Source of the DNA: Laetmonice hystrix
Taxonomy: Eukaryota
Reading direction: 5' to 3'
Assembly (NCBI GenBank): GCA_965235115.1
Contig: OZ249436.1
Coordinates: 33,108,001-33,172,000, forward strand
DNA length: 64,000 nucleotides
This document shows positions 16,043 through 45,600 of this stretch, in pieces. Numbering within the stretch: the first letter of the stretch is position 1; each line of letters begins with the position of its first letter. The notes below the pieces were generated by a model that was not told the origin of the DNA, made no database searches, and was given only the letters and a program-made list of their open reading frames with translations. A program made the translations under genes and the position numbers.

Positions 16043-16138
16043 TCCTAATCCGGACAGTGAGTGTGCACTACAGGTCCTAATCCGGACAGTGAGTGTGCAC
16101 TAAAGGTCCTAATCCGGACAGTGAGTGTGCACTAAAGG
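16043..16138. repeat. 32-bp tandem repeat x3
   Basis: tcctaatccggacagtgagtgtgcactaaagg repeated three times. Confidence 0.95.
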
Positions 16139-16320
16139 TTAAGGACAAGTATTAGAAGAAAACATAATTTATAGCATTCATCCACATTAGGCCTAACCTT
16201 TTGCGGTCGCATGATTATTAACAGGCCTCAATGTGGAAACACACGTACTGTTTTGCCAAATTTTCAAAGTCGCAAAGCGATTCGTGGAATGATTATTGAG
16301 GACACTACAGACACTGACCA

Positions 16321-16757: not shown

Positions 16758-18015
16758 CATCCTTTAATATCGTCGCTCGACGTCCGCCTAGCTCTGTATA
16801 AATGAAACTCTATAAATAAAGGCCTTCACAATTTACTGACGGTTGATCCATGAACATAGAGATCACTGACAATACAAGCTGCAGTGCTTTTATTCACGGA
16901 ATATAATATCGACGCAGGTAATACGAGCAAGTTATTCTTCTATTAAAAGCAGACATTTAAAAACACAAAAGAAGTCTCCGTTATATCCAGATATTGACCA
17001 GACAGCCTACCTTGAAACGCATTGACGAACAATGTATTTTTAAAACATTGACAATGGAACCTTCCACGGTGATGGGGGTCGGGTTGTATGTACGTTAACC
17101 GCCAATGGGTTTTTTTTCAGGGGGGGGGGAGGATGGGGTCCTGATGTTGTGACTTGGTTATTGATACGGTGTACGATCTGTGCTGGGCCTGCTGTGGGTA
17201 AGACGTGATGAACAGGGCAGAAGTTCACGGAGACATGTTTACATGTCGGAGTAGCGGCCATCACGGTGGTGTAGGCAGCCTCTACCATTACCCGAGTAAT
17301 GAGGTGTGAAGATAGGACAACATACGCGGGAGGGGGGGGGGTGCGTGTTGACCCCTTCGGTTTCTAGTATTTCTACCAAAACAACACTTTCTTCTGTTAT
17401 TTCTGCCACTTAATGTACTGTAACATTCAGTTGACCAGCCATGAAGGTTCGTTTTGACTGGAATCTCTCAGTCCTGTCTCTGGATACAGGAGAAGGGTTA
17501 ACAGCACTCCCAACTCAAACCCACTATCTTCAGTCACATTCCCCAGGGTACACTGCCCTTCCTGACGACCCAGATTATCGGCCGATTATCCCCCATTCTC
17601 TTACTAATCCAATCCGAAAAGCCTCGATCCCTCAACGACAAGACAACATCAAGCCAGACATAACTTCATGTAAATTACCAGCTTGTCCAATTACCTTCCT
17701 GATGACGGTCCTGTTTTACTAGCCGGTATCAATGTCTCACAGAGGACGACCGCCGTCCCCCCAGCCCAACCCGACTTCGCCCGGCTTCCCCTCGTGGGGA
17801 CCGCCGGCAAATTGAATTTCCCGTCTCCCGGGACAACTTGGCGCGGTGGGCCGGGAGCTCTGCGCACTGTCAACAGCCAGACCAGCACAGACTCCAGTAT
17901 AGTACCCACCAGCTGCCTCTGCTCGCCAACAGTAAGGGTCAATGTCTTGTAGACACAAGACCCTTCGGCTGACTCGTCTTCATATCCTGCCTCCCGCCAT
18001 TCATTGCATGTAATG

Positions 18016-18581
18016 CAATGTTCTACCTCCTTCTAGTATAGGGTATAATGTTCTATCTCCTCCTATAGGCTATAATGTTCTACATGTACCTCCTCCTAGT
18101 ATAGGGTATAATGTTCTACCTCCTCCTAGTATAGGGTATAATGTTCTACCTCCTCCTAGTATAGGGTATAATGTTCTACATGTACCTCCTCCTAGTTTCG
18201 GGTATAATGTTCTACCTCCTCCTAGTATAATGTTCTACATGTACCTCCTCCTAGTATAGGATATAATGTTCTACCTCCTCCTAGTATAGGGTACAATGTT
18301 CTACCTCCTCCTAGTATAGGATATAATGTTCTACCTCCTCCTAGTATAGGGTACAATGTTCTACCTCCTCCTAGTATAGGTTATAATGTTCTACCTCCTC
18401 CTAGTTTCGGGTATAATGTTCTACATGTACCTCCTCCTAGTATAGGGTATAATGTTCTACCTCCTCCTAGTATAGGGTATAATGTTCTACCTCCTCCTAG
18501 TATAGGATATAATGTTCTACCTCCTCCTAGTATAGGGTACAATGTTCTACCTCCTCCTAGTATAGGGTACAATGTTCTACC
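18016..18581. repeat. 30-bp minisatellite, about 18-19 copies
   Basis: Unit tatagggtataatgttctacctcctcctag; produces the GGGRTLYPIL pseudo-ORF. Confidence 0.96.
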
Positions 18582-20999
18582 TTTGGCATTGTTATCATTC
18601 TTGGTACTGGGAAAACGCTTGCTAAGCAAGCCGTCCCACATTTCTTGAGTTTCAGATCGAGTAGGCCTAATTGCTGACAAGCAGTGCCAATACCGACCGA
18701 AGATCCACATAACTTTATCTCTATCTCTCTCCTCTACGTGTTGCTTTGTTCTTCCTCCACTCCGATGTGACATCCACCTTTTTCTCCACCTTGCCACACA
18801 ACCAGTTAACACCCCTGCCATCATCCACACCTCAAAACAAATTCCATTAAACCAAGATTGATTTTGCCGCCGAACTTCGTTTTTTTCACTGCATATAAAC
18901 AACAAATTAAGCCGAACTGCTCCTGCTAATCGACGCTCTCAGCACCGTGTCACACTACAACACTAAACAGAGACACTTGGAGAAGGAACCCTCTCGATTA
19001 TCGCTCTTCTTGATGCAGCAATAACCCTGTAATCAACGACTTTCGTAATCACTTTCGTCAATACAATACGTCGGTGTTATCGACAAGTGAATGGTGAACC
19101 TCCTTATCAGCTCTTGTCACCTCAAGTGATAGCACTCCGTCGATACTTCAGATATTCAGGAGTCAGAAAAAAAATCTTACGAAGCAACCATCTAATTAAA
19201 TTATCGCTTACATCAGTGTCGGAGTACTGTTCTGTTAATGACTCTACTAATTAAATACCACTGCTGTGAAATTACACCATCGAGTCGCTGCGGTATAAAA
19301 AGGTAAGGAATCACTTCGGAGTTCTACGTACTTGCCCTCAGCGCTCTTGTGGCCCTGATTGAAAAATTACATTACATTACATATCAGTGTATCTTGCCAA
19401 TGGCATATCGGACAAACAGATATGTATACTGCACTTAGTCAATTTGCGTTTAAAGATAGCAAAGAGAGAAGCCTTCTAGACTGAAATAGGTGCTTTTTTT
19501 AGATGGCTTATGTGTAAGCATTTTAACACAGTTGACTTGTCGTTATAGGAGTCGTCCAGCAAAAGCCCTTGTAGGGGGATATAAGAATTCCAAGGACGCT
19601 TCCCCAAACAAATCATATCCCATCCAAACAGGCTGGTGACACTGACACTGAGCAACTATTTCCCACTTTCTGTCACAACTAAATCTGCAGAGCAAACAAA
19701 GTCTTTGTCGAGGACGAAACTGCTCAAACAGACCATGCTTGCAGATCATGCGGCCCATAACGCACCAAAATACCGCTTGCCTGTCTCTCTGTATGCTTTA
19801 GGGAAATCCCTAGGTCAAACTGGCCAAACACAGCCAGTTTCATGTCGGCTTTCCCAAGGTTATTATGGCCTCATCCAAGAGTGTTTATGGTATCACTCTA
19901 GATACAAGACCAATCGTCTACGGATTTATAGGCTTATGTGTTTTCTTTTACAAGATGTTGAATTTTCTAACTCAATGCTTTACTATACACGGGTACTGAT
20001 CATGGCGGAAAATCAACACTGCACTTAATGAATCGGCTGCACATACAAATGTACCTGATCGACCTATGTTAATGATGTTTTTAACTACCAGGTCAATCTT
20101 TGCATGCACGTGTGTCCACAGACGCCTGCTGTATATTACCCAGTGTGTAAACCTCCCTCTCGACGATACACAGTTACAGTTCAATTCCTGCTACCCGCAT
20201 GTACCTTGATAGAAAAGGCATGGCCCTTTACTGCAATCTACGCAGGTCTTTCGTCGCTCTCTTCGCATTCCTCCACCGTGGCCGCCTGGTGGCCGGGGCC
20301 CACACTAAAAGTGCGATGACCCTCTGACCTGGTCAGCTGGTCACTGGTCAGTCTCAGACTGACCAGGAAGTAATGGTCTGACACAAATAAGTGTGTAACA
20401 TCGTATCAGGGTAGATACGCTAAGCTCTCACAAAAATTAGCAATGTGAGAGATCACTTAAATGTAGCTAAATCATGGTCTCTCCTCAAATAAGTACGACA
20501 TGGCTGGGAGCAATCTCTAAGTGCCATTGGTTACTGACTGGATGATCTATGTTGAGTGAGACATCTGTAGGCTATGGTTGAAACCGCTCCGATTGTTCCG
20601 AAATCTTGACTTGGCCGTTATTCCTAGGAGGAAGGGTGGTGGCCAACAGGCGGTGTTTTACACACATTCACTCCGTCATACATTCCATAACATCTCGACT
20701 TTATAGCCTGGCTCTCAGACTTCCACCAGAGGGGGTTGTATGACAAGAAACAGAGTAGTCATATACAAGGATTTATTAAGTGTGAAAAAGACCAGCCGAG
20801 GAGGCAAAGAGGGTGTTAGAAACACCCCCGACCATTCACACGGCACTCAGGGCTACTCGCCACCTCCAGGACGATCAGGGACTGCCTGACCCTACCTCAA
20901 TCCCCCCACTCATCTGACCCAGCCGACCCGTGCGCCATCAGTCGACTGTGTCCAGAGATCGCCCCCAGTGTCTGCTTGCTGGCGGGGTACGTTCCACTG

Positions 21000-21260
21000 G
21001 CGGTGCGTTCTGATCGATCAATGTTTGCGTGGCCTCCTGCAGTTACTCAAACTGACACCCAGTAAACTCCTCCAACCGCCTCCGCCAAGTCCTGGCGCTG
21101 CTATTCTTCCCGACGTCAAGAGGCGCCGAGGGAGACGAGAGTTTCTTTCCTAACACGTCCCTAACAAGGCGCCGGGGAGCGGTGGGCCGACAGCTGCTGG
21201 CCGCGGCTCCTCGCTCACGGCCGGCCGGCTGTGGCCACCGCCCGCCCGCCGGACACGTCC
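21000..21260 (-). mobile_element. Degenerate RTE/RTEX-like LINE 3' fragment
   Basis: Translation LVRDVL...VGKNSSARTWRRRLEEFTGCQFE*LQEATQ resembles the RTEX-type end LVSDVLLW...GRPARTY...LEEDTGCQxEELxxAM; contains an in-frame stop; recognised by eye. Confidence 0.42.
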
Positions 21261-22860
21261 CCAGTGGGGCCACCCCCTGCAGCCCAATGTTTCTCTATAC
21301 CGACAACTGGCCTTGGGGCTGCATGGTTTGGCCATGACCGGCCGTTACTTGATGTCCCTGAGGAAGGACTCGTTCTGCTGACGAGTGGATGCTGGCGCCC
21401 GGCCGAGTACATATGGCACGAGGGGGGTATGCGTGTGGAGTCGAGGCACGAGTCGCGTACAACTACATAATGGTACAATAACAGGTTACTGACTTATCAT
21501 CATTAATTTCCGTACTCTTCCTGGGCTTGGGATGATTACTAACCGGACTACTGTAATGGCCTTTCCCGCCACACCATGCTAACACACGGGTCCCATGGAC
21601 AGACGCTGCTATCTATGGACGGTCCAATGAATTAAAATCTTTAAACAGAACACACGTTCTAATTCACAAAGAGAAATTAGGATTATATAGCTCCGTCCAT
21701 TACTCATTCTATCTCCAAACCAGGTGGACCTCATAGAAGTGACCCCCTTATCACTTGACCTACACTTTTAATGACCCACCCAACTATTATTCACCCCTGT
21801 ACTGTGAAATCTTTTCCTCGCTGACAATCTGAGCTTCCCTCTACAGAGATAACCACATCATGTTGTTAATGAATTCTCACTTCCCATGTCATTACGGGCC
21901 GGGTAACGGGTAATCTGTTTGCGTCAGGTTGGGTCGGACTGGGCCTCCCGCTCTACGGTCCAGTGGGCGTGGGCCGTGCCATGGTGTTGATGATCACAGG
22001 GCCAAGGGAACCCCTGCACACCTCCCCCTACATCATGGTTCCTCACACCGGCAACACCCCCCAACTCACCCCCCACCCCCAACTCAACCCCCACCCACCC
22101 CCATACCCTCCAGCCATCACAAAGGCAATCCCTCATTTAGCAATATCCGACACTTCCCAATATTGATTTAGACGATTTTATTAGCGATTACGACGGGACG
22201 AATTCATTATCTCATCCCGACAAGTGGAAAACATTCCACTGAATATGTCCAGATAGGGCCTGACTCAACGTAACACAAGGAAATCATGCAGATCTTCCCG
22301 TTCTGGCCTGCAGTAACCCAATGTCGCAGCATCCTTCCTCCAGGAAATGGAATCATCCAACATCATTTTAACAGCCCCGTTTTTATCCACAGATACTCAA
22401 TCGTGTCTCCGGGATGCAATTAATTCTTCAATCTCCTAGCGGTGACCGGATCTAGTTCTTCTTGTCTCGTATACTGGACGAGCAGTGAGCCGCTAATGAC
22501 AAGTACGGAGTCCGGTGATTGGTAACTGAACACTAAGGTCTCCTCGACACCTGACACCTGTCAGGGACAGCTGGACCTTTGAGATCATGACCTACAGGTG
22601 CGTATCGGTGTACATCTCAATCCCGAAACTCAGCCGCTCTCATCATTATTACAACCGTCAGTCACGACTAGGCCGATCCAACAACAGTTCAGGCCAATCA
22701 TTATGCTCTTGACCTACATTGAAGTTCCTTTTGAAATCATGATAGCATTCAGTTCACCATTATTTTCAAATGCTATATGGACGGCACCCGGGCCATTATG
22801 TGCCCGTAAATTTACAGACCTTGCACGCTGGTCACACACACAGATACTAACGCTGAGCCT

Positions 22861-23490
22861 ATTGCGGATTCGTTCTGATCTTGAGCACCATCTCATGTAC
22901 AAAATATTGCGGATTCGTTCTGATCTTGAGTACCATCTCATGTACAAAATATTGCGGATTCGTTCTGATCTTGAGCACCATCTCATGTACAAAATATTGC
23001 GGATTCGTTCTGATCTTGAGTACCATCTCATGTACAAAATATTGCGGATTCGTTCTGATCTTGAGCACCATCTCATGTACAAAATATTGCGGATTCGTTC
23101 TGATCTTGAGCACCATCTCATGTACAAAATATTGCGGATTCGTTCTGATCTTGAGTACCATCTTAAGTACAAAATATTGCGGATTCGTTCTGATCTTGAG
23201 TACCATCTCAAGTACAAAATATTGCGGATTCGTTCTGATCTTGAGCACCATCTCATGTACAAAATATTGCGGATTCGTTATGACCTTGAGTACCATCTCC
23301 TGTACAAAATATTGCGGATTCGTTCTGACCTTGAGTACCATCTCAAGTACAAAATATTGCGGATTCGTTATGACCTCCAGTACCATCTCAAGTACAAAAT
23401 ATTGCGGATTCGTTATGACCTTAAGTACCATCTCAAGTACAAAATATTGCGGATTCGTTATGACCTTGAGCACCATCTCAAGTACAAAAT
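22861..23490. repeat. 45-bp tandem repeat x14
   Basis: Unit attgcggattcgttctgatcttgagcaccatctcatgtacaaaat with exact 45-bp period; the 13th unit starts at 23401. Confidence 0.98.
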
Positions 23491-23618
23491 ACCGAGTTCA
23501 ACCATTTCAAATCAATGCACAATTATATCCTCCCATGCACTGACGGAAACAGGCCCTAAATTTCTATTCATATCGCTGTCTCAGTTTGACCTCAGACGCC
23601 CCGACCGGGATGGTAGGA

Positions 23619-23632
23619 CTGCCCCCTGGCGG
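23619..23632 (-). promoter_or_regulatory. CTCF-like motif (CCGCCAGGGGGCAG)
   Basis: Exact core consensus match; sequence only. Confidence 0.4.
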
Positions 23633-23857
23633 GGACGCGGGGAGGCCGGGGCAGCCATCAGAGAGTTTCTCAGCGGGTCCTCGGGTCCCCCCGGATCGGT
23701 CCTACGCGGCAGGATACCACGGACTTCCTCCTGGTCCGGTCCCAGGGACACCCGGCCTACTGATCAAACCAATGCCGTACGTCGAGACGGCGATGACTTG
23801 GAAGATTTGTCGCTGTTTGGGGATGGGATTGGAATCGGCAGCTTCTGTGGATATTGA

Positions 23858-24860
23858 GGACGGTGGTATGGGTATCTGCTCGGATGGGGGACGGTGGTAT
23901 GGGTATCTGCTAGGATGGGGGACGGTGGTATAGGTATCTGCTAGGATGGGGGGGGGGGGGGCGGTATGGGTATCTGCTAGGATGGGGGATGGTGGTATGG
24001 GTATCTGCTAGGATGGGGGACGGTGGTATGGGTATCTGCTAGGATGGGGGGGGGGGGGCGGTATGGGTATCTCCTCGGATGGGGGACGGTGGTATGGGTA
24101 TCTCCTAGGATGGGGGACGGTGGTATGGGTATCTGCTAGGATGGGGGACGGTGGTATGGGTATCTGCTCGGATGGGGGACGGTGGTATGGGTATCTGCTC
24201 GGATGGGGGACGGTGGTATGGGTATCTGCTAGGATGGGGGACGGTGGTATGGGTATCTGCTAGGATGGGGGACGGTGGTATGGGTATCTGCTAGGATGGG
24301 GGACGGTGGTATGGGTATCTGCTCGGATGGGGGACGGTGGTATGGGTATCTGCTAGGATGGGGGATGGTGGTATGGGCATCTCCTAGGATGGGGGCAGTG
24401 GTATGGGTATCTGCTAGGATGGGGGACGGTGGTATGGGTATCTGCTAGGATGGGGGATGGTGGTATGGGTATCTGCTAGGATGGGGGATGGTGGTATGGG
24501 TATCTGCTAGGATGGGGGATGGTGGTATGGGCATCTCCTAGGATGGGGGCAGTGGTATGGGTATCTGCTAGGATGGGGGACGGTGGTATGGGTATCTGCT
24601 AGGATGGGGGATGGTGGTATGGGTATCTGCTAGGATGGGGGATGGTGGTATGGGTATCTGCTAGGATGGGGGATGGTGGTATGGGCATCTCCTAGGATGG
24701 GGGACGGTGGTATGGGTATCTCCTAGGATGGGGGCAGTGGTATGGGTATCTCCCAAGGATGGGGGACGGTGGTATGGGTATCTGCTAGGATGGGGACGGT
24801 GCTATGGGTATCTCCTAGGATGGGGGACGGTGGTAGGGGTATATCTGTTAGGATTCGGGA
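23858..24860. repeat. 31-bp G-rich minisatellite, about 32 copies
   Basis: Unit gggggacggtggtatgggtatctgctaggat; two units have expanded poly-G. Confidence 0.96.
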
Positions 24861-27800
24861 CGGTGGTACTGTACCCTCCGCCCGGGTACTGTACCCTCGC
24901 TGTAGCATCCCCCGACACCCCACCACTGGACACAGATTTCCGTGTCATATATCCCAACCCCCCCAGACTGACCTTTCTGAGGTCATCCAGTATCAAAGGC
25001 TGACCAACAACACTGCCCAGCAGGCCGCCACCTACACGTCCCACTCCCCCTGGTATCCTGGAGTTCTCACAACATCACTCAGCCCCTTTCATTATACCAT
25101 TATCGGACTGCTATTTTTCTGTCCGCCAGTGTATGTCCAAAATGTGTCCGAATGTTGAAGTTTGGCCCACCGACTATCATCTCCTGAGTCTCATCTTGTA
25201 GCGCTGTTATTTGTGATCTGTCACTCAAACAGCCGATCCCATAACGCCATAAGACACCCGAAAGTACGGTTTACCCTGAAATGGTACCAAGGCATCCATC
25301 AGCGTGTGATCTACCTGGGCCACCGCTCGGTCTGGGTCCCTGAAACCCAAGGTGAGCCGTATCAGTGGATGCACGCGCGGCCTCCCCGGTCCCGCCATCA
25401 AGGTGATCATGATGGGAACCATACCGAGCACATTCCCTGCCCTCTCCGGGCCGCTCACCCCGGGGTGTGGTCGGCCAAGGCGGTCAGTAGGGGCCTCCAG
25501 TCCGGGGGGAGGGGGTGGAGCAGATCTGGACATCGTGGGAGTTTTTACGGAACGGGATCCTCTGTTTGAGTGCATCTGGTACCGATCCTATTTGTATGGG
25601 GGTGTCCGTGTGTGCGGGGTACAGGTGCATGTGTGGGTGAGCACGTGCGTGTGCGTTCAAAGGCCTGGGCTGTCCCACGACCGGAGCGAGAGGTCGAGGT
25701 TATAAGATGTGCAGCACCAGTATTCGTTTCAAACTGGTGTCAGGCCCCCAACCTCTCACTATTTTATTGCATATGGTCAAATGCTCGTTTCAGCTCATTA
25801 GTCTATATTCTTGAGGCATGAACTACATCAATCATTTGTAAGCCTTTGATATTTGTAACCAAACCTCTTAATATCAATTCAATATCAAAGTCGCGGTATA
25901 AGTATAAGATGATAGGATTCAAAAGGTCACATGAATTCCATCTACATTAAAGCTATGTGAAGTTTCGAATAGCAAGTGACCAAGAGTACCCTACCACTGA
26001 ATGCAACCCTGATCCCACTGGTCCATCTGCAACCAAAGCGCATACTGTCAACGAAGGGTCAATACAGATTTGGTCCTTCCTGCCCTCTGGGACCAACTTG
26101 TACAACCGAACAGTACCTATATCAAAGAAACTCCCCCCATTTTGCTAATTTCCTGTCTCTTCTGCTGTTCATTAAGAGGTACATACGTGTCTATATAAAT
26201 ACGTACATATCCATTTGATCCCACAGGGCTGAACGCTGAGACGGACCAGGAACCAGCTGTGGATTCAATGAGTTCCCCTGCCACGCCCTGCCCCATACAC
26301 CACCTCCTGTAGCTATATATCCTGACCTTGTTACCACAAGGACTCCTCCTCCACCTATAGCACCGTGGAGACCTCGTACAGGCCCCCAGAGTCGACCACC
26401 TCCTTCCCCGGTCGTAACATTCCGGCGCGTGTGACCCATTGACAACTAAGGGTCATTACACCCGTAAAGGTCATTAGACCACCTAAAGGTCAGGGGGATA
26501 TTACAAATATCTACCCTACTATTTAACTCTGTGCTTCCCTCGCGCCATGTGTTTGAGGTAATAGACAATACCGTTTACGTATATATACCATACACAAATA
26601 CATGGTGCCATTATGACGCAAAAAACTACCATTACTCTAGTTTTGGTTCGGTATCAGATAGCAGCAGCTGATGGTGTGTGACCAAGCCCACTGAGGTCAG
26701 CACAGAAGGTGGTCCAATTGGGGCCCAAATACCAGCTAACAGCCTCCTGGGTTTGGCTTGCTAGGTCAAAGCACCTCTGAAGAGCACTTTACATTTGCTG
26801 TTTGTGCAACAGTATGCATGCAAAATTTAGTTGTGGCCCATGGTTGGGCAATAACAATCATTAAGAGTCCATCTCTTGCAGGGCTCATGGCCCCAGTGGG
26901 AAGTGGAAGCCAAGTGGACGGCTAGGGGCAGTCGTCAGCAACCAACAGCAGTAGGCCAGCAGCAGCAGTTAGGCATTGCTTACCCAGTACAAAGTGCCCT
27001 ACTTGACGGAGCGTGCCAAGCACTCTTCCCTTTGCCACTATGACCTTGGGGCCATCAGAGCATTGTTAACAAACTTACATGTTATCTCCGAATGGTGAAC
27101 ATTCACAAAACAAGTTTGGAATAACGTCCGAAAACTGGCGATTTTGGGGATGCATGTCCATAATATGTCCATGGGAATGAATGATGGAATGTTGTTCTAA
27201 GACATAAACAGGCGGAAATATGGTCTCAGTTTGACTTTCAGGAAACACTTAACGGTTCACTAAGGATACACTCATGAAGCGCATTTCAATTACCACATGG
27301 ATAACACAGGAAAAGATCCTGTTTCTCATGAAAACCACATTCGATGGACCCTCCCTTCGGATCAAATTGAAGGAAGCAAAATATCAAAAGGCAGTTGCGG
27401 AACGTGCTGCTAGTGGCATCGCCGACTGTGTCCCAGTGGCCATCAAACTGCCTGCAACTCCATTCCTGCAGCGTTGTCTACATGTGAGCAAACAGTGGCA
27501 GCATGGAGCAGCCTGGCCACTGTTTGCTGAGCATGTTGTGGGGAGCCTGGCGGACGGCACGCCTCAGGGACCATCTGTAAGGGCCATCATCGGCGGCCCT
27601 CCTGTTTACAGCCTCCTGATGCCACCGGCCGACCGTCCTCCACGGCTACGGGCCAGGGTCGCCTCCGGTACCCCGGGACGGGTACTCCAGAGCTCACCTG
27701 ATTTTCTCCACCGACACCGGCCGACGTCTCAAAGTTAAGGGGCTGACCACGTGGTCCATATGCAGCTCACGCGCCCACTGTTAGGCCTGGCGCCACGGTC

Positions 27801-28093
27801 TACGGGCAGTTGTTGAATTGTTGACAACCCTGGCATCAGGGAGATCTCATCCAGGGCTGGTCAAACTGGAGGAGCTGGAGGACCTAGGGTATTCCTGACA
27901 TCTGCTCAGCTACGACAAGGCGGCATAACAAACAAACCTGGAAAGTAGGGAGACGTCTACCCTTGAGGATATTACAAGGAGCTAAGGCCCCAACCTGAGC
28001 GCGGTTCCAAGTACTTAGTTAACTGAACGCCCTATCCCGGGCCCTTCTCTATGATCGCCCTGGGATTTCAAGACTGGACCAGCGTACAAAACA

Positions 28094-28945
28094 CACCTCT
28101 ACATATACCCTTAGCTTCAGCAGCAACTGTCACACAACGCCTGGTCAGTATGTGTGAACAAATCTCTACATACACCCATGGCTTCAGCAGCAACTGTCAC
28201 ACAACGCCTGGTCAGTATGTGTGAACACATCTCTACACATACCCTTGGCTTCAGCAGCAACTGTCACACAACGCCTGGTCAGTATGTGTGAACATATCTC
28301 TACATGTCACATGTATACTCTTGGCTTCAGCAGCAACTGTCACACAACGCCTGGTCAGTATGTGTGAACAAATCTCTACATATACCCTTGGCTTCAGCAG
28401 CAACTGTCACACAACGCCTGGTCAGTATGTGTGAACACATCTCTACATATACCTTTGGCTTCAGCAGCAACTGTCACACAACGCCTGGTCAGTATGTGTG
28501 AACACATCTCTACATATACCCTTGGCTTCAGCAGCAACTGTCACACAACGCCTGGTCAGTATGTGTGAACACATCTCTACATATACCCTTGGCTTCAGCA
28601 GCAACTGTCACACAACGCCTGGTCAGTATGTGTGAACACATCTCTACATATACCCTTGGCTTCAGCAGCAACTGTCACACAACGCCTGGTCAGTATGTGT
28701 GAACACATCTCTACATATACCCTTGGCTTCAGCAGCAACTGTCACACAACGCCTGGTCAGTATGTGTGAACACATCTCTACATATACCCTTGGCTTCAGC
28801 AGCAACTATCTGTGTACACAACGCCTGGTCAGTATGTGTGAACACACCTATATTGCCACACAACGCCTGATCAGTATGTGTGAACACACCTATATTGTCA
28901 CACAACGCTTGGTCAGTATGGGTGAACACACCTATATTGTAGCAC
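28094..28945. repeat. 67-bp tandem array (about 10.5 copies) followed by three shortened ~42-bp derivatives
   Basis: Unit cacacaacgcctggtcagtatgtgtgaacacatctctacatatacccttggcttcagcagcaactgt; units start at 28131, 28198 and onward. Confidence 0.96.
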
Positions 28946-33146: not shown

Positions 33147-33363
33147 TGCAGCAAGGACAAACAAGATTCCCGTTTAAGCATGAACGACCATACAGAAAGG
33201 CTCCAGTTCGGCCAAACTCCAATATCCCGTTCAAAGGATCCCGGTGTCGCACACTTACGGAGAAGTCGCCAGTACCAAGGGCTGTCTCTCCAATAGTTGC
33301 TCCCTGATGTAATTAGGTGGAGCGTACCTATAGAGGCGTGCTGATAACAGTTCTACCACATAC

Positions 33364-33525
33364 CTCGGCACATTCCCCCGGTACAGTTGGAGAAGTCAAG
33401 GTCGCCGCCTCCACAGTAAGTGCCGCCGTTCTGGGGTGGCGGGTTGTCACAGGACCTCCGGCGGTGATGGTTGCACTGAGGGCTACATGTAGACCAGGAC
33501 GACCACGTCGACCAGAAACCATTGA
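33364..33525 (-). CDS. unc5: UNC5 exon, TSP1 domain 2 (VNGFWSTWSSWSTCSPQCNHHRRRSCDNPPPQNGGTYCGGGDLDFSNCTGGMCR)
   Basis: 162 nt; acceptor attttcag|TC, donor CGA G|gtatgt; WxxWxxW motif and the UNC5-type NCTxGxC end. Confidence 0.96.
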
Positions 33526-35074
33526 CTGAAAATACATCCAATACATCAGTTAGTAAGTTATCGACAGTTCAGTTACTAAAGAAATAGTTGTCCTGTTGGC
33601 GGACGCCACATGGATCTGCGATCCTAAAACACGAGACTGTGTGGTCAGAGCTATATAGTGCCTGTCAGCCGTGGCAAGAAGGGAGAACGGCATCGCCTGA
33701 CGAAAATAACGTCGTCAATAAACTGGTCTGATTCAGACAGAAACTGACGGGAACTGACTTGTTTTTTTCTCAAGGAAAAGGAAACAAGGTGAATAAAACA
33801 AAACACGTTTTCAATGGTCTTTTACAATGTAGTAACAATCTGGTTCCGATGCGGGGAACAAAAGATGGTATTACATCACACTATTTTTTATACTTCACCT
33901 ACAATAATTTTTTTCTCTTCATCAAAAAGAAACAGAAAATATACATAAACTGAGAACAAAGCACTGTTTGTGTGGATAGTAACGTAATAATCATAGTTTA
34001 AGTTAACCTAGGTTATGGTTGTGATAGAAAAAAATACCTGACCTATGTGGGTCACATGGTTCAGAACAATATTGATTATCATGCGTCCAGCTCTTTTCTT
34101 TGTACAATGTCTAAAAAAACATACATCAAAGTGTATGAAACGTCGAGTGTTTGATGATAGAGGATCACCCCTACACAAGGTTGACCAAGACAGAAGATAC
34201 AGGACAGGGACAGAGGAGGGACACATCATGGAGGAGGTCACACACTGGACACGGACAGAATGACACACTGTGAGCGCAGTATCAAAACCAAGCGCATGTC
34301 TTCTAAAGCCAGAGATGCATTTATTTTTTTACAAAAGAAAGCTAAGTTTCTGGTTGGCCTTACAGACCAAAGTAATGTATCCCTGAATGAGACATCTCAT
34401 CTCAAAACACAACTGACACATCTAACAACAATCAAACTGTTTGCCTGGATGTAACTGTTACCGTTTGGCAAGCAAAAACAATTTTAACAATTTTGGTGAA
34501 AAAGGATTACAGGTATCAAGCTTTCATCACATGAATATGTGTACAAATATCAAAATACGCTCGGTTCCTAATTCGCCGACAAAAAAATTTCTAATCCTTT
34601 ATAAAAAAAATAGTATTTTCATAATAACTGAACGTAACACCTTGAGATGTCCTACCGAAAGTTGAATGACAAAAGTGAACAATATTAATATTGCCACTAC
34701 ATAGTAACTTAGACTACACAACATAAAGTAAGACTTATTCAGCAAGGTTGGTGTTTAAAATGTTAATTATTACATATCGGAGAACAATTTTAGGATGCTC
34801 TACTTCAGTTTTTTGTCACACATGTTTCACCAACCATACTGCTTCCTCCAGAGCAATAAAGGAACTTAAGTCATTGCAGAAAACGACTATCACCTGACGC
34901 AACAATGATGCCACAACAGAAAAATATGAATCTACAAAATGTCTGCCTCCCCTTGAAGTTAAAATATGACACCGCCTGGTGTGTGTTTCTATACATATTA
35001 TATATGCACACCAACACATCCGACATTACAACACAGACCACCGACCTCCACATCATCATGCACCATCTCCTTAC

Positions 35075-35221
35075 CTGGGTCGGGCAAAATGAGTGAGTTC
35101 CCCAACCCCCCGCCAGGGGGGATTGGTTCATTCTCCTCATTGCCCTCAGTCTCACCGTCCTCATCCTTCTCCTTCTCTACTAAATCCTTAGTTTCATTAT
35201 CCATCTCGGGTTCCATACCCT
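35075..35221 (-). CDS. unc5: Candidate cassette exon encoding an acidic linker between TSP1-1 and TSP1-2 (EGMEPEMDNETKDLVEKEKDEDGETEGNEENEPIPPGGGLGNSLILPDP)
   Basis: 147 nt, phase 1-1, stop-free; acceptor cacactaccag|AG (weak pyrimidine tract), strong donor CCA G|gtaagg; no homology support available. Confidence 0.55.
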
Positions 35222-38200
35222 CTGGTAGTGTGCAAGCATGGCATATAAAGAGATTGTGGATGTAGGTACAACCGTGTGGTGGGAGGGTGAGGGTAACGTT
35301 ACGTATGATAATGTACACCTGATAGTTGTGTATGGTTAACTGTGTCACATGAGGGTGTGACTTGACCACAATGAAACACAAAAACACATAAACCGATAAG
35401 AAAGGGAGGTGCAAGTTGTCAACTGGAATGTCGCACTAGAACGCCAGGACATTTTTTTCTTAATAACTGTTTGCTGTTTTCTTACTTACAAAACAAAAAT
35501 TATTTCTAATCTTCACTCAAAATTTTGTCATTGTCATGACCGATAAAAGTTAGCAAGATTACACCCTCTAAATCTATAATTCTGATGTTTAGCTGAAACC
35601 TTGCGTTTACTTGCGACATCTCAGTGTTAAAGGATACAAAACCGAGGAATATCTAGAAACGGTATTGAAGCATGCGGAAGCAGCGTGCCAGCCATCTCTA
35701 CTGAATGTCTACCTCGGAAGGCTTTGATGTGGACACAGCTTGAAGCTGGCTGACGCCACAAACACTGACAATACACGATCAACCACTCCAACCTTGATCT
35801 CTCCAACTCAACTATTGTTGGGGGGGGGAGGCTACTTCTGTCACATTTCAACATTATTGTTGGGGGGGGGGGGCGCTACTTCTATCACATTTTTTATACT
35901 TATTCACCACTTAAATTAAGATTTTCTTTTGTTCAATTTAAAGGGTTGTTACAATCACGGTGCCCATATCCGATATGTCAACCACAGATCATGATAACTG
36001 AATTGGTAACATCAACGAAAGCAACCACGAAAATAAACAGACAGATGACAACGGAAAAGTCAAGGGAGGTAAGGGTTTCTTACCACAAAACAACAAAACA
36101 TACATTGGTAAAATATAAAATACAATAAAACCGAAAAAAATGTGTACGAAGGGAAATAAAACGGGACACCTCTGTTCCACAAAAAAAACCCATCTGATCC
36201 CAGGATGATATGAGGTACGGGAGACAGGAGACAAAACACCCAATAGAATAATACAGAACATATACAAACCAGATGGGATCTTGGCTAGTAACAAAAACAT
36301 GGTACGAATATTCATGAAGAACGGTTGGTTCGGTGTATATCTGATCATCAGTGTATATAGTTTAGACACTCAAACTACTATTCTTATCTTTGACACTGAA
36401 TCCCCTCCCCCTTTCATAGAATCTACTAGCTGCAATAACTTTGTGATGTTTCTGTGGCTATTGTATATCTATCTGTATATCTGTACAAAATCACCATGGG
36501 ACTGCAACCATAGCAACAAATGGTATCATTGCAGGTCTATGTGAGAAACGGTCTTGGTAAAGTTATTTGATGGTCTGTGATAAGCCAGAGTCGTCTGAGT
36601 GCGAGTGCTGTCTGTTGCTCATCTCTATAATTTGACCACATAATGTTAGCCCCAATATATGTATGAATGATCTAACAAAGGACATCACCTAAACCTCCAG
36701 TCTGCTTCCTTCATTCTCTGATTACACAATCACTCATCCCTGACTCTGACATATGGAAATATCGAGAGAAATCAGCGCTGTCATTTCCCGATACCTATCG
36801 CTCCGGTCCGCCCCAGCATTAATTGGTCATCAAAGTGCCATGCATTTGCATATCTCGCCTCGATCAGGAAATCGGGGGTCAAAAGTGGGGATTGTGTGCT
36901 CAATGAAGTCCACCTGATGATAGCAATGGTGGTGGGCAGGAGTATGGGTAGTCCGTGTCGCCTGCGGCAATGTCAGGAGTCAGACTGTGCGGATTGAAAC
37001 CCTCTTTGTGCCAGCCCCGTCTCCCAGGCGACTCGGCAATCAGAAAATCCGTGCCCGCCCGGTCCACTCCCTCCTCAACCATCACGACTTTTTATCGACA
37101 ATGACTTTTATTGTGTCTCGCCAGAATACGGACGCTCGTCTCAGACAGAGACTCACGTCCCGCCTTTATTCAGATGATCGCTGTCTCCGAGGTATCGATA
37201 TCCGCTCTGGGTAATAAATATATCTTTCTCTGCAGGCGAACTCTTGGGGATAACGTCTGCCGTAGACTGATGAATTTGTTTTGTTTTTCTTTTGTTTGCC
37301 ATTTCATGCATGTACCACGGTATAAATAATGTTTAGCTTTCCTTCTGCATGGAAAGATCGGACACAACTCTCTTAAAGAACGACCCAAACGGATACCGAC
37401 ACAATTTCCTTATATTCCACATACTCCCTCCGTTTTTCTGATGTTCAGCATTTACATATACTGACCAAAATCTTTCAAAAGTATTCACTTTGTCTCTTTA
37501 CTCCATGTCTTCATTACCATGCATGTACAAGTTTTATTGTGAAGAGCTTATTGAATTAGGGCAGCCTAAACTTTGCACTTGAGGTCGTACGTGGTGAACA
37601 AAATCCGCCGTCCTTTATATTATTTAGCTGTCATTGATAATTGTGATACCCCAGTAGAATGGATGGACACCGGGACAAACATAACTGATGACATGTTTAC
37701 TCACTGATGGCGGGCTAGTCAAGCCACTGAAGCATCTGTTCCTTCCCTCACCCTTCCAACCCCGCCGTCTAAAGGTCATTAACCTTTCCTCAAATGAGGA
37801 GCAGCGCAAAGAACGGAACCAAACTTAAAACACCCTGAGCCAGATTTTAACCGTTTTCAGTGGTATTGATTGCATGAGACTTTGAGTAGCCGGTGCCCCA
37901 GTGGGACTGGCGGTGTCATTAGCTGAGACTGGGGCCAGGACCAGACACTGACCAGTGATGGGAGTCTGGAAGCCGGCCCCATGTGTGGAGAAGGTAAGAT
38001 GATAAGTTAGGAGCGGTCGGTTGTAGTGGTGGTTGGGTTGAGGCTCCTGATTTATGCACTGATCAATCATGGAGTGTCAGTATAGACACTTGACAAGATT
38101 CGGTCCGTCACGGTAAACAGAGGGTCAACCTGTCGGCATGCTCCCTCCCAACCCCTCCACCGTCTTTCATCAAATCTCTTTGTGAACCGCACGCCCCTGC

Positions 38201-41200
38201 TGCCACTTGTACTATTCCCAACATTATCAGCTACTGCTGAATCATTGAAGGCACTCTCAATATCCTTCACAACAAACTCACCCACCCCCAACCACGCATA
38301 CAAAGAACCCATTAGAATTTTAATCAGTTGACAAATTTAATAAATTTGAAATTGTAATAGAAGCCAAAGCTATGCACTCTTTATGAGCTGAGTCTTGATA
38401 TTCTATCCCACATTATCACTGCCATGTGTAATAACTTAATTCTACAACAGGCAGAAGCGGCGTTATGAATCCCCCGGTGGAGAAGCTGACAGAAGTTGTT
38501 AGATACACACACACTTAACAACCAGGTGTGTTTTCCCCACACCGAGACTCTAATCACACCTATGTGTGTGAAACTCTATCAGGCCGACCCCAAGCCCCAC
38601 CAGATAAAGGGCGTGAAAGCCATGACATCGACTTGCCACCAGGACACAGGCCCCCTATGGAGTAGAAAGACTCGAGTCGACTCGGAGATCCCTGGTCCAC
38701 CGACCCCGTATCTCTCGACTCACAGCTATCACTACATACTGCTATCTGACAGCCTGAATGTACTGCATTCCCACCGTAACCATCCGGCACCAATAAACCA
38801 TAAACAAACCACCGACATATCAGTGGCCATCACTGGGCCACCATTATGGTAGACAGTGATAAACAAACATACGTACATTAGAGCATTAGGCGGCTATCGC
38901 CCTTTGAGCTCGTTTCATCAGTGGGGGCGATCCACCTGACTCTCGGTCGTGCCTCCTCCACCTCCTTATCTCGGGACCAAGCTTGCCTGATCGGACTGGC
39001 ATAAACAATCAATCTGACATGGGTCACAAACCGGGCTCCATTTACCGGCTGGCGAGGCTGGTCGGCGGTATGGTTTGAAGCACCTTTACGAAGGCGACCC
39101 AACAATGACGGCCCGATAAAGATCGCTACCGCGGGCAAGGTATGGCTGCGGTCCACCGGCACCTACCTACGGTCGGGGCGGCGGTGGGCAATGAGACAGA
39201 GAGAGGGGAAAAAATCTTTGGGCGCACAAAGCCAGTCCATCTGCTTCTGCAGTTCTTGCAAGTAGCCTTTCACAATACGGCGTTTTTATCATTAATATGC
39301 CATAATGGAGAGAAACAACCTTGTCAAAACGTCCGTAAATTGGCAGTATCTTACGAGGTAAACGGTCTGTCTGAACACGTTCCATGTGGATGCCTTCGGA
39401 AAACTGGAGATAAAAATCTCGGCCTGTGCGCTCGGCCTAAGACAGCTCGGAACAGAGACCATTTGTTTGCAGGTAGTCAGGGAGGTTAAGGAGTCAGCAA
39501 GAGTCGAAATGATCTCACATCAGACAGAAAGCTAGAAATGGCATCCTTTCTCTTGCACTTTTCAGTAGTATAAAAGGCGGTCAGTTGTCTCGTGGGGGAC
39601 ACATCCATTTAGCATAAAGAGCCACCACAATAGAACCACGCTGTTTGGCTTTAGTTCTAGCTTTGTGCTGCTAGATCCAACCCGAAGTTTTGCTGAGGGC
39701 TCTCTGGAGTGACCTTCTAAAACTGGTCATGCGGCAACTGCTGAAAGATCCTCTGCATGCTATCAGAAAGGTCATCTTAGTTTGTTTCGCCGAGACATTA
39801 AGACTAATCCTGACAGCAATATCTGCCAATTTATTTCCGGCTGACACGTTTGCGTCCTGTCAAAGCTGTTTTAGCTTACATCTTCGCTGCAAGCGGTCAC
39901 TGCCAGGCGCGGTGGATACTCGATTGGTGGTCATCGATTCCCCAGGACCCCCTCCCCTCCCGACCACTGTCCAGCGCCCACTGCCTCACCCCATGCCTAC
40001 ACCAGCATCAAGATTAACAATTTTCCTTGCACCATTTACTTCTCCTAATTCAATCCATGTCTTGGCCTTGGCAGCGTATCACTGAATGGGAACAAAACCC
40101 GGAGATCCCTGCGATAGAGGCCCTGTATTGGGAACAGCCTCGTACCAGCAGGTGGGGCAGAGATAGACTGTGGATCTATGCAGATGGTAGATAACTCCAC
40201 TCATCCATTAGGGTGGATTAAATGCCTGTGTAATTTCTACCTCAGGGGGCGACCACACAAGACACGCGTTGTTGGTGTACAGAGGCTGCCCAAATGTAAA
40301 GAAAAGCCAGAGATCCCATTTCTCATCGCAAACACCATAACAAGAATGATACTTTTGCTGAACCAGCTATGGCACCTCGGTGTTTATTTGTATATAAGAT
40401 CTCTTGGAAGAATAAGTGTGTCTAATTGTTGTTAACGATGGTGGTTTATTGGTCCTCTGGGAGAAAAGATCCCCAGTGATGCACACAGGTGAAACACAAC
40501 AAATGTGGTAATGTGGCAAGTGGGTGTATCTAAGCCAGTCAATCATTGGCTTAACGCATCACAGGTATACGCATGCACCTTCCACACTTTAGACGAGGGC
40601 ATACTGCAGAAAGACAAAGGAGGTGCGGCATCAGCTTAAACTTGATGATATCCATTAACAAGTTGAGGCTTAGTGTTGAATGTCCAGTCGTGGAGTACAA
40701 CCTGTCATTGTGATGATTGTAATTATAGATGGCGTCTGCTCGGCTGCCTAACTGAAGGTCAACCAGACGTAATGAACAGCGGCTGGAAATTATTGTTCAC
40801 AACCCCTCAGTCAGCAGGCAGACACTACTATATTTATATTTCAAACATCTAACATACAGATTGAAGTCAATTAACATTGTATACGTCAACATCTTATAAC
40901 GGAGACATATACAACTATATAAAGGCCCTCCATGCACCAAGTTGTACGTTACCAAATTCAAAAAGCGAAGCAGGATATTAAAATTTAACATCAAACATCA
41001 CAGACTTTTAATAGCCATGACATTTGCACTTTTACCGATAACGTTTATAACTGGCGATCAAAATATCGGTACGGAAATAACGCCGGGGGCAGCAATGAAT
41101 TTATACGTTTCTCACATCCTGACCCCACCCTGTACCTGATCTAAAAAAGTTCTAATTTACATATCTTTCTACATGCGTCTTGCCTTGTTGAATTGCCCAT

Positions 41201-42487: not shown

Positions 42488-42655
42488 CTGGGCAGTGGGT
42501 GGTGCAGGGGACACGATCGACGGGGTCCCCCGGGCAGGCTTGCCCTCCGTTCAGGGGCGTCGGGTTGGTACACGTCCGACTCCGGCGCTGGGCCCCCTTG
42601 CCACACTTACTGTTACAGTCAGTCCACTGACTCCACGTCGACCACGCACCGTTCA
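42488..42655 (-). CDS. unc5: UNC5 exon, TSP1 domain 1 (VNGAWSTWSQWTDCNSKCGKGAQRRSRTCTNPTPLNGGQACPGDPVDRVPCTTHCP)
   Basis: 168 nt; acceptor tacttgcag|TG, donor CCA G|gtaagc; WxxWxxW motif, RxRxC, six TSP1 cysteines. Confidence 0.96.
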
Positions 42656-45600
42656 CTGCAAGTACATCAAACATTCATCAGCAACAACTCAACAATCACT
42701 GCAGCCACTGACAGCCGTAAAGGCAGTCATTACATTCTCAGACATATTAACAAAGCTATCCTCATGTGGGAAGAGATGATGAATTATGAACGATTCTGCC
42801 ATGAATCTCACGGTTTTGTAACTACAGTCTGGACTGAATGATGTTCATTGTGTTACATGTTTCATAATGCCATCCATCGTCTTTACTGCGCTATCATGTA
42901 GCAGGACAATGTGACGCGAACTCGATTATCTGTAAATACACATATAGACATCGCCATCACTTGAGTGGGGTTGTCTGTATTCAAGGCTTCCACCGGAATT
43001 CCCCCAGAAAATGTCGAGAAATGAGCGTTTCCTGAACCACCCTCCATCCCGACATATACACTCCTCCAAGTCTGACTGAGTCAGTTGGCATGACAAGACC
43101 TCAGCCAAGTCCCATGTCTCCGTTGCGTGAGGCCGACTGGCGGGAGGCCCTGTGTCCGTGCCCGGTACTCAGGTCGGCTTACGGCAGTCTTGGCTCGCTC
43201 CCCTCCGCCTCCCCAACCCTCTGACTCTTTACATGTCATCTACGCTCTACATCCAGCTATTTGATCTTCACCATGATCGACGGGAGCAAGTCATGCTCGG
43301 CGTCAGCACGCTGGAGTACAGCATCCAGTCTCTTTCTCTCCTCTCTCTCCAGAAAGAACCGGTCTCTCAATTCAATCGTGTCTCACTCCCAAAGTCATGT
43401 CACAGACTGGCAGACGATCAGGTTTCACTTCCAACCGATTCTAAAATAAAAGGACTTCAAGTACAGGTACGCTAACATTGGCTTAACCTCCGGTATGAGT
43501 CTCCTAGGGTGCATTTAAAGAAGAATGGCAGCTCCAATTTCAATGCGCCATTTCAAAATTTCACTGGCGACCTTCTCAGAAATATCAAAAGCAGTGGTTT
43601 TTAACCTCACTCTGACCAGCGGCTAACTTTTCGGATACACCATCGCAACCGCTGGGAATACCATTATCACCTCATAATTCTACATCAGAGCCCGTTATGT
43701 TCTCAACGTCAATATTTCCATATCACCTATCTGACCCAAACATCCAGTTCCCTCCTATAGTTGCCCTGGCCATGGCTAGTTACCCCTGACCTCCTTTAGA
43801 ACATGTCCCCGTTTTGCTATCACTTTTTGTTCTGAATCCGTTTTCTGCCCACCATCTCGATTCAAGGGAAGCGATAAGGAGGGAGACCACCAACCGAGCC
43901 CCAGGCTTCCATCCCCATGTTACCATGAACCCATCTACATACCCCGACCAACCAATAATCTCCACTCCTAAACTCACCCCAACCGCAGCAAAATTCATGA
44001 GTTGTCAATCTAATCCTTTGACAAATACTTCCTCTGTCTTCATCTCATTAGGCGTGCTTGTTGGGCCATTTTACACATGGCTGGTAGACAGAGGCAGGCT
44101 TATTGAGCGAGCAGGCCGGGCATACTACTCACAAACAGCCTCCATAGACTGCTTGCCTTGGAGAGGCTGATTGGGCCATTTGGGGACAAGCCTAATCAAG
44201 CAGTTGCACTGAGGATGCACATTGTGTTGTAGTTTTCAGAAAAGATTATCTACATAACTGTGTACACTGATTAATTTCGAGAGCTTTCATAAGAAATGTG
44301 TACTCTGGTGCAGTGTTATCGGATATTATGCGCTTTTTATGCCGTCTAAACTTCGTGCAAACATTAATATCTCCCCCTGAACTCTATTGCGCTTGAAAAG
44401 GCTTAATAAAGAGGGACGTGGTCTTTTAATTTCAGGACACCGGACGTCTATTCTTTAAATGAATAAAACATCCTTCATTTAGTTTACTCAATGGCAATAT
44501 GAAAAACATCTGAGTACTCTGTCAGTTCACTTTCAGAAAATATCAAATATTATGATTCTTTGTCATCTGGTTTTTCAATAGACAAGCTGCATTACAGGGT
44601 TACAAGCAAAGATCACAACAGTGTTATCAGAAAGCAACTTTTTGATTGCGTTACAAAGACACAACAGCCGTCAATTATCTTCTATCAATTTCACCTTTTT
44701 GTCCGTTTCCGAGATTATTTCTGAGAATATCGCCGAGTATGTTTGCCCACATTCCATTTAAAACAAAACATTTCGAACCTTTTTCACCTTTGTCGTTACG
44801 TGACTCAGCTAAACCTGGGTCTGTGATTCTCCAGGAGGGGACGCTAGAGAGAGTGTTGCCGGAGAATGCCTGCCGAGGGCGCTGACCCTCACCCCCCACG
44901 ATGGCCACTTACGGTCAGAACTAATGGCTGCACCATCTGTTGACTATATGTTTCAACTAGAACCCAGACGATGCCTACTCCTGGGGGAGTCACTAATTTA
45001 ACGTTTAATAAGTCAATCAATGACCACGATTGAGGCCCTATTTAAGCTAACCGTTTAATGTCTCCTCCCACGGGACTGCCATAACTGGTGTTTGTCCTTG
45101 ATCTAGTTTGCAACATGAAGCCTGGTTATTGGGCATGCACCCCCTCCCCTTTCTACCACTCAATGTCCCAATGCTCTGATCTCTCAAGTTGACAATACCA
45201 AGTATTGGCAAACAACCATGATCTCAAAACACAGACCAATAAAACGAACAAGCAGCGAAAAAAAAGTGGAAGATGGATCCATGCAATAGGCGAGGGCGAT
45301 GTCAAACATGAGAGACAGGAGTGGCTGTGACAATTCATAACATCAATCTAACTGTCTTACGCTATTTGCATTTCCCGTGGCTTACGGGCCGCTCGGTCCC
45401 GTCTGAGCCGAGGATTAGAATAATAAATTCAATTTTCCACAAAATTACATTTGCTTTCGGAGTCATTTTGGTCAGATCATCCAGGCATCCCATGGGAAAT
45501 TGTAACTGTCGATGCTACCAACAGATAAAAGCATGACGTCCCGAACGGCCGCGTGTTTGTTACCCCACAGCGAACGCTCTGACTCTATTTTTCTTCTCCT

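What the first reader, a model, noticed from the sequence alone, without database searches (positions are those of the whole stretch)
35075..35221. Candidate cassette exon inserting a strongly acidic 49-aa linker between the two UNC5 TSP1 domains
Seen: in the phase-1 intron between the TSP1-1 and TSP1-2 exons there is a 147-nt stop-free segment bounded by ccag|AG and a strong CCAG|gtaagg donor, in exactly the phase needed. It encodes EGMEPEMDNETKDLVEKEKDEDGETEGNEENEPIPPGGGLGNSLILPDP: 17 D/E versus 3 K, with an N-E-T glycosylation sequon. The interior is GAR-rich (typical of exonic enhancers) and the pyrimidine tract is weak, as in many alternative exons. Known: in characterised UNC5 receptors the two TSP1 domains abut, and the ectodomain binds netrin, FLRT and glypican/heparan sulfate. 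Inference: a regulated polyanionic spacer could lengthen the ectodomain or compete with heparan sulfate for basic netrin surfaces. I know of no UNC5 isoform of this type.
Basis: partly seen in the sequence, partly recalled or inferred. Interest (0 to 1): 0.75.

Follow-up and report, generated by a model that had tools for sequence, protein, structure and literature searches.

The report
Likely acidic extra exon in UNC5
Inside an intron of a worm-like invertebrate's UNC5 nerve-guidance receptor gene lies a 147-base stretch that looks like an optional exon. Its closest sequenced relative keeps it in readable form, so it is probably real, but no RNA data could be found to show it is used.

Summary
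On the minus strand, 35221-35075 is a 147-nt stop-free segment bounded by ccag|AG and CCAG|gtaagg. It is in phase with the TSP1-1 exon (42655-42488) and the TSP1-2 exon (33525-33364), which are also phase 1-1. It encodes the stated 49 residues: 17 D/E, 3 K and an NET sequon.

- **Chance:** by a crude splice score it ranks first of 421 in-phase open segments in the 8,962-nt intron. Only 2.5% of simulated introns do as well.
- **Conservation:** an exhaustive search of 1.84 billion proteins found one hit, a genomic ORF (P0001). It lies on the same 394-kb contig as the ortholog of a constitutive UNC5 exon (88% identical). Both exon ends are fully conserved (13/13 and 10/10 residues). The acidic middle has diverged (12/25) but stays acidic and open, with a 3-nt indel. 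The donor codons and about 57 nt before the acceptor are also conserved, and farther flanks are not.
- **Other checks:** it is single-copy, with no Rfam match and no unusual fold.
- **Missing:** the only available runs were genomic DNA, so inclusion, skipping and regulation are untested. More distant relatives could not be reached.

Verdict: about 0.65 that this is a real, lineage-restricted UNC5 exon, most likely an alternative cassette. The heparan-sulfate-competition idea remains speculation.

The parts
35075..35221 (-). Candidate 147-nt phase 1-1 exon encoding a 49-aa acidic insert. It has a conserved N block (GMEPEMDNETKDL), a variable acidic middle and a conserved C block (LGNSLILPDP).
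   Evidence: sequence and frame. (splice score rank and null). (71% identical open ORF in the relative). (no globular fold; one predicted helix at residues 9-21).
35222..35280 (-). Acceptor AG (35223-35222) plus about 57 nt of upstream intron covering the branch-point and pyrimidine-tract region. This stretch is conserved in the relative (14 of 19 in-frame residues).
   Evidence: Similarity is lost further upstream. A polymorphic 6-nt insertion lies just beyond it at 35292.
35057..35074 (-). Donor GT (35074-35073) within CAG|gtaaggag, plus about 17 nt of conserved downstream intron. The in-frame codons G-K-E-x-V-H are conserved in the relative.
   Evidence: Donor score 11.5.
42488..42655 (-). 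UNC5 TSP1-1 exon, 168 nt, phase 1-1. It is the upstream splice partner, with its donor after 42488.
   Evidence: sequence. (Pfam TSP_1, E 3.5e-10). (UNC5B 6ool, E 1.8e-24).
33364..33525 (-). UNC5 TSP1-2 exon, 162 nt, phase 1-1. It is the downstream splice partner, with its acceptor before 33525.
   Evidence: sequence. (TSP_1 and TSP1_spondin hits, below the Pfam cut-offs).

Best explanation
The segment is most likely a genuine protein-coding exon of this invertebrate's single UNC5-type netrin receptor gene. It is spliced between the TSP1-1 and TSP1-2 exons using the acceptor at 35222/35221 and the donor at 35075/35074. I think it is more probably an alternatively included cassette than a constitutive exon, at roughly 2:1. 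The reasons are that its length is a multiple of 3 with matching phase, so skipping leaves the canonical abutting TSP1-TSP1 receptor, and that the intron next to it is conserved, unlike the intron next to a constitutive exon of the same gene. Inclusion would insert 49 residues with a net charge near -14 and one N-glycosylation sequon, with no predicted globular fold. That would turn the one-residue TSP1-TSP1 junction into a long flexible acidic tether. Shown here: the sequence anatomy, the better-than-chance splice signals, and frame-preserving conservation in one relative. Inferred: actual splicing, regulation, and any effect on ectodomain reach or ligand binding.
For: The anatomy and phase are exact. 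The candidate ranks 1 of 421 in the intron, its splice scores match this gene's real exons, and the simulated-intron probability is 0.025. An exhaustive phmmer search of 1.84e9 representatives gave one hit, P0001 (E 4.2e-9, 71% identity). The word-based search of 5.8e9 proteins returned the same protein (E 1.1e-27). P0001 is a 179-aa open genomic ORF on the 394,481-bp contig of ENA assembly ERZ26222911. That contig also carries P0002, the ortholog of the window's cytoplasmic exon at 88% identity. The alignment shows 13/13 and 10/10 identity at the exon ends. The middle is 12/25 identical with a single one-residue indel, no stop, and retained acidity (18 D/E in the relative by my count). The donor codons G-K-E are conserved, as are 14/19 residues upstream of the acceptor. 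P0001's outer flanks show no significant similarity in any frame. At the constitutive exon, similarity stops within a few residues of the splice sites. The segment is single-copy in its own genome, so it is not a repeat or transposon. It has no Rfam family and ordinary fold energy. No SNP or indel was listed between 34944 and 35291 in three DNA runs of one sample, which show about 1 difference per 130 nt elsewhere (weak evidence).
Against: There is no transcript evidence at all: the only runs that hold the sequence are genomic DNA, with contigs running evenly through the intron and no joints. Only one relative supports it, and only as a protein translation. Its DNA could not be fetched, so the AG and GT dinucleotides, synonymous changes, and the strand relative to the UNC5 exons in that species are unverified. 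The divergent middle (48% identity) is about what neutral DNA would give, so coding-specific constraint rests on one 3n indel and the absence of stops in a T-poor sequence. No called ORF of 80-254 aa from other relatives shared three 5-residue words with it. The open frame continues past both splice sites in both species.
Confidence: 0.65

Rival explanations
1. It is a conserved non-coding intronic element, such as an intronic splicing regulator or a transcriptional enhancer of UNC5 or a neighbouring gene. It happens to be open in one frame and flanked by splice-like dinucleotides, and it is never spliced into mRNA.
For: Conservation extends about 57 nt upstream and about 17 nt downstream of the proposed exon and is strongest in two short blocks. 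The middle evolves at a near-neutral rate. GA-rich, T-poor sequence stays stop-free easily. There is no RNA evidence.
Against: The conserved blocks end at a near-consensus donor and start around a usable acceptor, in exactly the phase the flanking exons need. Such a pairing arises in only 2.5% of simulated introns. The only indel inside is a multiple of 3, whereas the upstream flank appears to have gaps and a frame change. Acidity is retained through many substitutions.
Confidence: 0.18
2. It is a real exon but constitutive in this lineage. Every UNC5 mRNA of this species carries the acidic linker, and there is no regulated choice.
For: Its splice-site scores equal those of accepted exons of the same gene. 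Nothing here shows skipping.
Against: Intron conservation next to the exon, a length divisible by 3 and faster-evolving content are typical of alternative cassettes (my own knowledge of comparative studies of alternative exons). At the constitutive cytoplasmic exon, intron similarity to the same relative stops at the splice sites. This reading is included within the 0.65 given for a real exon and accounts for about a third of it.
Confidence: 0.2
3. It is a chance intronic open segment: a purine-rich low-complexity patch with accidental splice-like ends.
For: The sequence-only P value is 0.025-0.09 per intron, which is not compelling after multiple testing.
Against: An orthologous, open, 71% identical segment with perfectly conserved ends exists in a species whose introns are otherwise diverged.
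Confidence: 0.07

Closest known systems
UNC5B-delta8 (NOVA2-regulated skipping of UNC5B exon 8; PMC8358048) and isoform-dependent UNC5B shedding (PMC12480741)
   Same: Both are in-frame alternative cassettes in the extracellular stalk of a UNC5 receptor, and the vertebrate one changes receptor behaviour without touching the folded domains.
   Different: By my own recollection, the vertebrate exon lies between TSP1-2 and the membrane, not between the two TSP1 domains; I did not open these papers to check this. It is documented by RNA and function, whereas this one has no RNA evidence, is strongly acidic, and has been seen so far only in one invertebrate lineage.
Canonical UNC5 ectodomain (two Ig plus two abutting TSP1 domains), as in solved UNC5B 6ool and the review PMC10084454
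   Same: The host gene has the same exon and domain order. The window's TSP1-1 matches UNC5B 222-276 at E 1.8e-24.
   Different: In 6ool TSP1-2 starts two residues after TSP1-1 ends, leaving a single linker residue. Inclusion here would put 49 residues with no predicted globular fold between them.
C. elegans UNC-5 short isoform (PMC10464613) and the vertebrate UNC5A form lacking TSP1-1 (my own knowledge, not checked here)
   Same: Both show that UNC5 genes use isoforms to alter the receptor.
   Different: Those isoforms remove domains or use other transcript ends. None adds a linker between the TSP1 domains.

Membership tests
UNC5 netrin receptor (host gene) | Two immunoglobulin domains at the N-terminus | tested here: inconclusive
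I-set hit on the ORF at 53009-52671 (E 4.8e-8). The upstream Ig1-like ORF at 60090-59701 gave no Pfam hit.
UNC5 netrin receptor (host gene) | Two consecutive TSP1 domains | tested here: met
   TSP_1 hits on 42655-42488 (E 3.5e-10) and on 33525-33364 (E 1e-3, below cut-off). Both domains align to UNC5B 6ool.
UNC5 netrin receptor (host gene) | Single transmembrane helix followed by ZU5, UPA and death domains | tested here: inconclusive
   A hydrophobic stretch lies in the exon at 12529-12407. ZU5 hits fall at 1858-1544 and 622-365. UPA was seen only in relatives' downstream ORFs. The death domain lies outside the window.
Conserved alternative cassette exon | AG acceptor and GT donor, length divisible by 3, open in the phase set by the flanking exons | tested here: met
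Conserved alternative cassette exon | Reading frame and splice sites conserved in related species | tested here: inconclusive
   The frame is conserved in one relative, and the donor and acceptor codons are compatible at protein level. Its DNA could not be obtained and other relatives could not be reached.
Conserved alternative cassette exon | Raised conservation of the adjoining intron compared with constitutive exons | tested here: met
   14/19 residues are conserved upstream of the acceptor, against about 3-5 residues at the constitutive cytoplasmic exon in the same species pair. This is one comparison only.
Conserved alternative cassette exon | Transcripts showing both inclusion and skipping | not testable with these tools
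The only runs listed (X1-X3, one sample) are genomic DNA with no joints.

The most novel reading that the evidence does not exclude
A lineage-restricted, regulated exon turns the rigid TSP1-TSP1 junction of UNC5 into a 49-residue, glycosylated polyanionic tether. The tether would change how far the netrin-binding Ig domains reach from the membrane, or act as a built-in heparan-sulfate mimic for basic netrin or glypican surfaces. That would give one invertebrate UNC5 gene two functionally distinct receptors.
Probability: 0.12. Interest if true: 0.65.

Novelty: new variant of a known kind. Interest (0 to 1): 0.42.

Why it matters
Most invertebrates have a single UNC5 gene, so splicing is the obvious route to diversify repulsive netrin signalling. 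The UNC5 ectodomain isoforms turned up by my searches act next to the membrane. An insert between the two TSP1 domains would be a different way to tune ectodomain length, flexibility and charge, and it is easy to test by RT-PCR and binding assays. If it proves to be only a conserved intronic element, it still marks a regulatory site inside a guidance-receptor gene. The case also shows that comparing one relative's ORF can lift a sequence-only exon guess from roughly even odds to probable.

Tried and rejected
- **RNA evidence:** The look-up of sequencing runs returned only three runs of one sample. Laid on 33200-39100, they proved to be genomic DNA with no joints, so nothing can be said about expression.
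- **Repeat or transposon origin:** rejected. DNA and protein searches of the organism's own genome find only this locus.
- **Structured RNA (snoRNA or miRNA) as the cause of the conserved island:** there is no Rfam match apart from a chance CRISPR-repeat hit at E 0.6. Fold z-scores are -0.64 on the gene strand and -1.88 on the opposite strand.
- **Recursive-splicing exon, an idea raised by earlier notes on this gene:** rejected. Joining TSP1-1 to the segment gives CCCAG|AGGGTA, which does not rebuild a GT donor.
- **Relative's TSP1-1 exon:** a protein search with the TSP1-1 ORF found no candidate.
- **More distant relatives:** I tried to reach the TSP1-TSP1 intron through ORFs of the cytoplasmic exon.
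- **Relative's whole genome:** The genome search cannot search eukaryotic relatives.
- **Transcript-derived proteins:** all 20 homologs of the cytoplasmic exon are genomic ORFs that end at the splice sites, so none is a spliced form.

Full report
**1. The observation**

The gene lies on the minus strand. One search shows ...cactaccag|AGGGTATGGAACCCGAG...TTGCCCGACCCAG|gtaaggag, with exon bases running from 35221 down to 35075 (147 nt).

The TSP1-1 exon runs 42655-42488 and ends CCCAG|gtaagc. The TSP1-2 exon starts at 33525 after ttttcag and ends at 33364. Both hit Pfam TSP_1, and other ORFs of the same strand hit I-set and ZU5. TSP1-1 matches solved UNC5B (6ool) at E 1.8e-24. The host is therefore a UNC5-type receptor.

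All three exons are phase 1-1 (168, 147 and 162 nt), so both inclusion and skipping keep the frame. The coordinates, phase, composition and sequon are all as stated. The open frame continues past both proposed splice sites (35435-35001, 145 codons).

**2. Is it more than chance?**

I enumerated every AG..GT segment of the 8,962-nt intron that is open in the required phase and a multiple of 3 in length. There are 421, and I scored them with a simple donor matrix and a pyrimidine-tract measure.

- The candidate ranks first (13.3), mainly because of its near-consensus donor.
- Across the whole window, the only gene-strand segments of 100 nt or more that score as high are three accepted UNC5 exons, this candidate and one unexplained segment at 61629-61519. 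The control strand has one such segment in all three phases.
- Of 400 simulated introns of the same length and dinucleotide make-up, 2.5% contain an equally good segment of 100 nt or more, and 8.75% one of 30 nt or more.

The acceptor is modest but no weaker than those of the gene's real exons.

**3. RNA evidence**

None could be obtained. The run search listed three runs of one sample and one study, none recorded as RNA. Laid on 33200-39100, their contigs cover the intron evenly at depth 40-60 with no joints, so they are genomic DNA.

The only use of these runs is for variation. The three assemblies differ from the window at about 1 site per 130 nt, yet list no difference between 34944 and 35291. 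A 6-nt insertion at 35292 sits just outside the conserved block. With about 2 differences expected in that stretch, this is weak support.

**4. Conservation**

A phmmer search of the 49 residues against 1.84 billion cluster representatives returned exactly one protein, P0001 (179 aa, E 4.2e-9, 71% identity over the full 49 residues). The word-indexed search of 5.8 billion proteins returned the same protein only (E 1.1e-27 over residues 50-140 of the open frame).

P0001 is a gene-caller ORF on a 394,481-bp contig of ENA assembly ERZ26222911. The same contig carries P0002, the best homolog (88% identity) of the window's cytoplasmic UNC5 exon 9476-9090. P0001 is therefore the orthologous intronic segment of the closest relative in the databases.

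The alignment breaks down as follows:

| Region | Identity to P0001 |
|---|---|
| 19 residues translated from the intron just before the acceptor | 14/19 |
| Junction residue | E in the window, D in the relative |
| N-terminal exon block GMEPEMDNETKDL (includes the sequon) | 13/13 |
| Acidic middle | 12/25, one single-residue gap, no stop |
| C-terminal exon block LGNSLILPDP | 10/10 |
| Codons spanning the donor | G-K-E identical (as expected if G\|GTAAGGAG is kept), then x-V-H |

The middle stays acidic: by my count the relative has 18 D/E in the homologous 50 residues. Beyond these limits, the remaining 52 N-terminal and 47 C-terminal residues of P0001 show no significant similarity to the window in any frame (54/300 and 88/300 shuffles score as well). 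There is a hint of homology about 170 nt upstream, but in a different frame and with gaps. That is what a drifting intron would look like.

At the constitutive cytoplasmic exon, similarity to the same relative and to ten further species starts and stops within a few residues of the splice sites.

The candidate and its immediate flanks are thus a conserved island that keeps its frame, its charge and its splice-site codons, in a species pair whose introns are otherwise diverged. Conserved exon ends, a fast-evolving interior and conserved adjoining intron are the usual signature of a conserved alternative cassette. That last statement is my own knowledge of comparative work on alternative exons and was not tested here.

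**5. Other explanations examined**

- **Repeat or transposon:** the segment is single-copy in the 627-Mb genome, so this is ruled out.
- **Intronic small RNA:** there is no Rfam family and no unusual folding energy, which argues against it.
- **Recursive-splice exon:** rejected, because the junction with TSP1-1 does not rebuild a GT donor.
- **Conserved non-coding element:** this remains the main rival. The diverged middle is about as conserved as neutral DNA would be. GA-rich sequence avoids stops easily. Coding-specific constraint rests on one 3n indel, the retained frame and the retained acidity.

**6. What it would do**

A structure prediction of the 49 residues alone gives no globular fold (pTM 0.29). 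It shows one helix at residues 9-21 and coil elsewhere.

In solved UNC5B, TSP1-1 ends at 276 and TSP1-2 begins at 278. Inclusion would therefore replace a one-residue junction with a flexible, glycosylated tether of net charge about -14. The plausible consequences are a longer and more mobile ectodomain, and altered electrostatics near the basic netrin and heparan sulfate system. These are inference only.

**7. Comparison with what is known**

The literature searches turned up three kinds of UNC5 isoform: UNC5B-delta8, made by NOVA2-dependent exon skipping (PMC8358048); isoform-dependent shedding of UNC5B (PMC12480741); and a short C. elegans UNC-5 isoform (PMC10464613). None describes an insert between the TSP1 domains.

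The searches cover open-access text only, and annotated invertebrate isoforms could not be queried. If real, this would be a new variant of a known kind: alternative splicing of a UNC5 ectodomain.

**8. Limits**

- Only one relative supports the exon, and only as a protein translation.
- More distant relatives have ORFs for the cytoplasmic exon, but their TSP1 introns could not be reached.
- All hits are genomic ORFs, not transcripts.
- Earlier notes of this scan suggest the organism is an annelid. I did not test that.

**9. Verdict**

My estimates are:

- real UNC5 exon: about 0.65, of which roughly two thirds alternative cassette and one third constitutive in this lineage;
- conserved non-coding element: about 0.18;
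- chance: about 0.07;
- the remainder is unassigned.

Interest is moderate: a plausible, easily testable, lineage-specific receptor isoform, with its function still open.

Noticed in passing
window 12576-28940 (arrays at 12576-12745, 16321-16757, 18017-18582, 22860-23491, 23858-24868, 28090-28940): The roughly 21-kb intron between the TSP1-2 and transmembrane exons is packed with tandem satellite arrays of period 30, 31, 42, 45, 54, 67 and 90 nt, several 85-95% regular. In more distant relatives the neighbouring introns downstream of the TM exon are under 1.5 kb (L007).
   Followed up: partly
window 35102-35126 (minus strand): Inside the candidate exon, ccaatccccc..gggggttgg forms a perfect hairpin of about 10 bp that encodes PIPPGGGLG. 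The relative's protein differs here (EPAAPDGELG), so the hairpin is probably not conserved.
   Followed up: partly
window 35160 and 35737: In all three DNA runs a contig fits the window only from 35160 onward, and another only up to 35737. Both have more than 250 nt of unlike flanking sequence and add only about 3-5 to the summed depth of roughly 59. The assembled genome holds only one copy. They may be short purine-rich matches from other loci or a minor structural variant.
   Followed up: partly
window 61629-61519 (minus strand) and 43353-43466 (plus strand): Two other open, 3n-long AG..GT segments score as high as real exons in the crude splice scan. One is 111 nt on the gene strand, upstream of the Ig exons. 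The other is 114 nt on the opposite strand and has a very strong pyrimidine tract.
   Followed up: no
window 34008 and 35292: There are haplotype or assembly differences within one sample: a 15-nt insertion after 34008 and a 6-nt insertion (GGGCAT) after 35292. The second lies just outside the conserved block upstream of the candidate acceptor.
   Followed up: no
window 9476-9090 and alignment A1: The cytoplasmic juxtamembrane exon carries motifs invariant or nearly so across the window and 11 related ORFs (such as QPDLTQTVVTIQNHNALDTPNNN and SRPxSxYSE). Pfam does not recognise them.
   Followed up: partly
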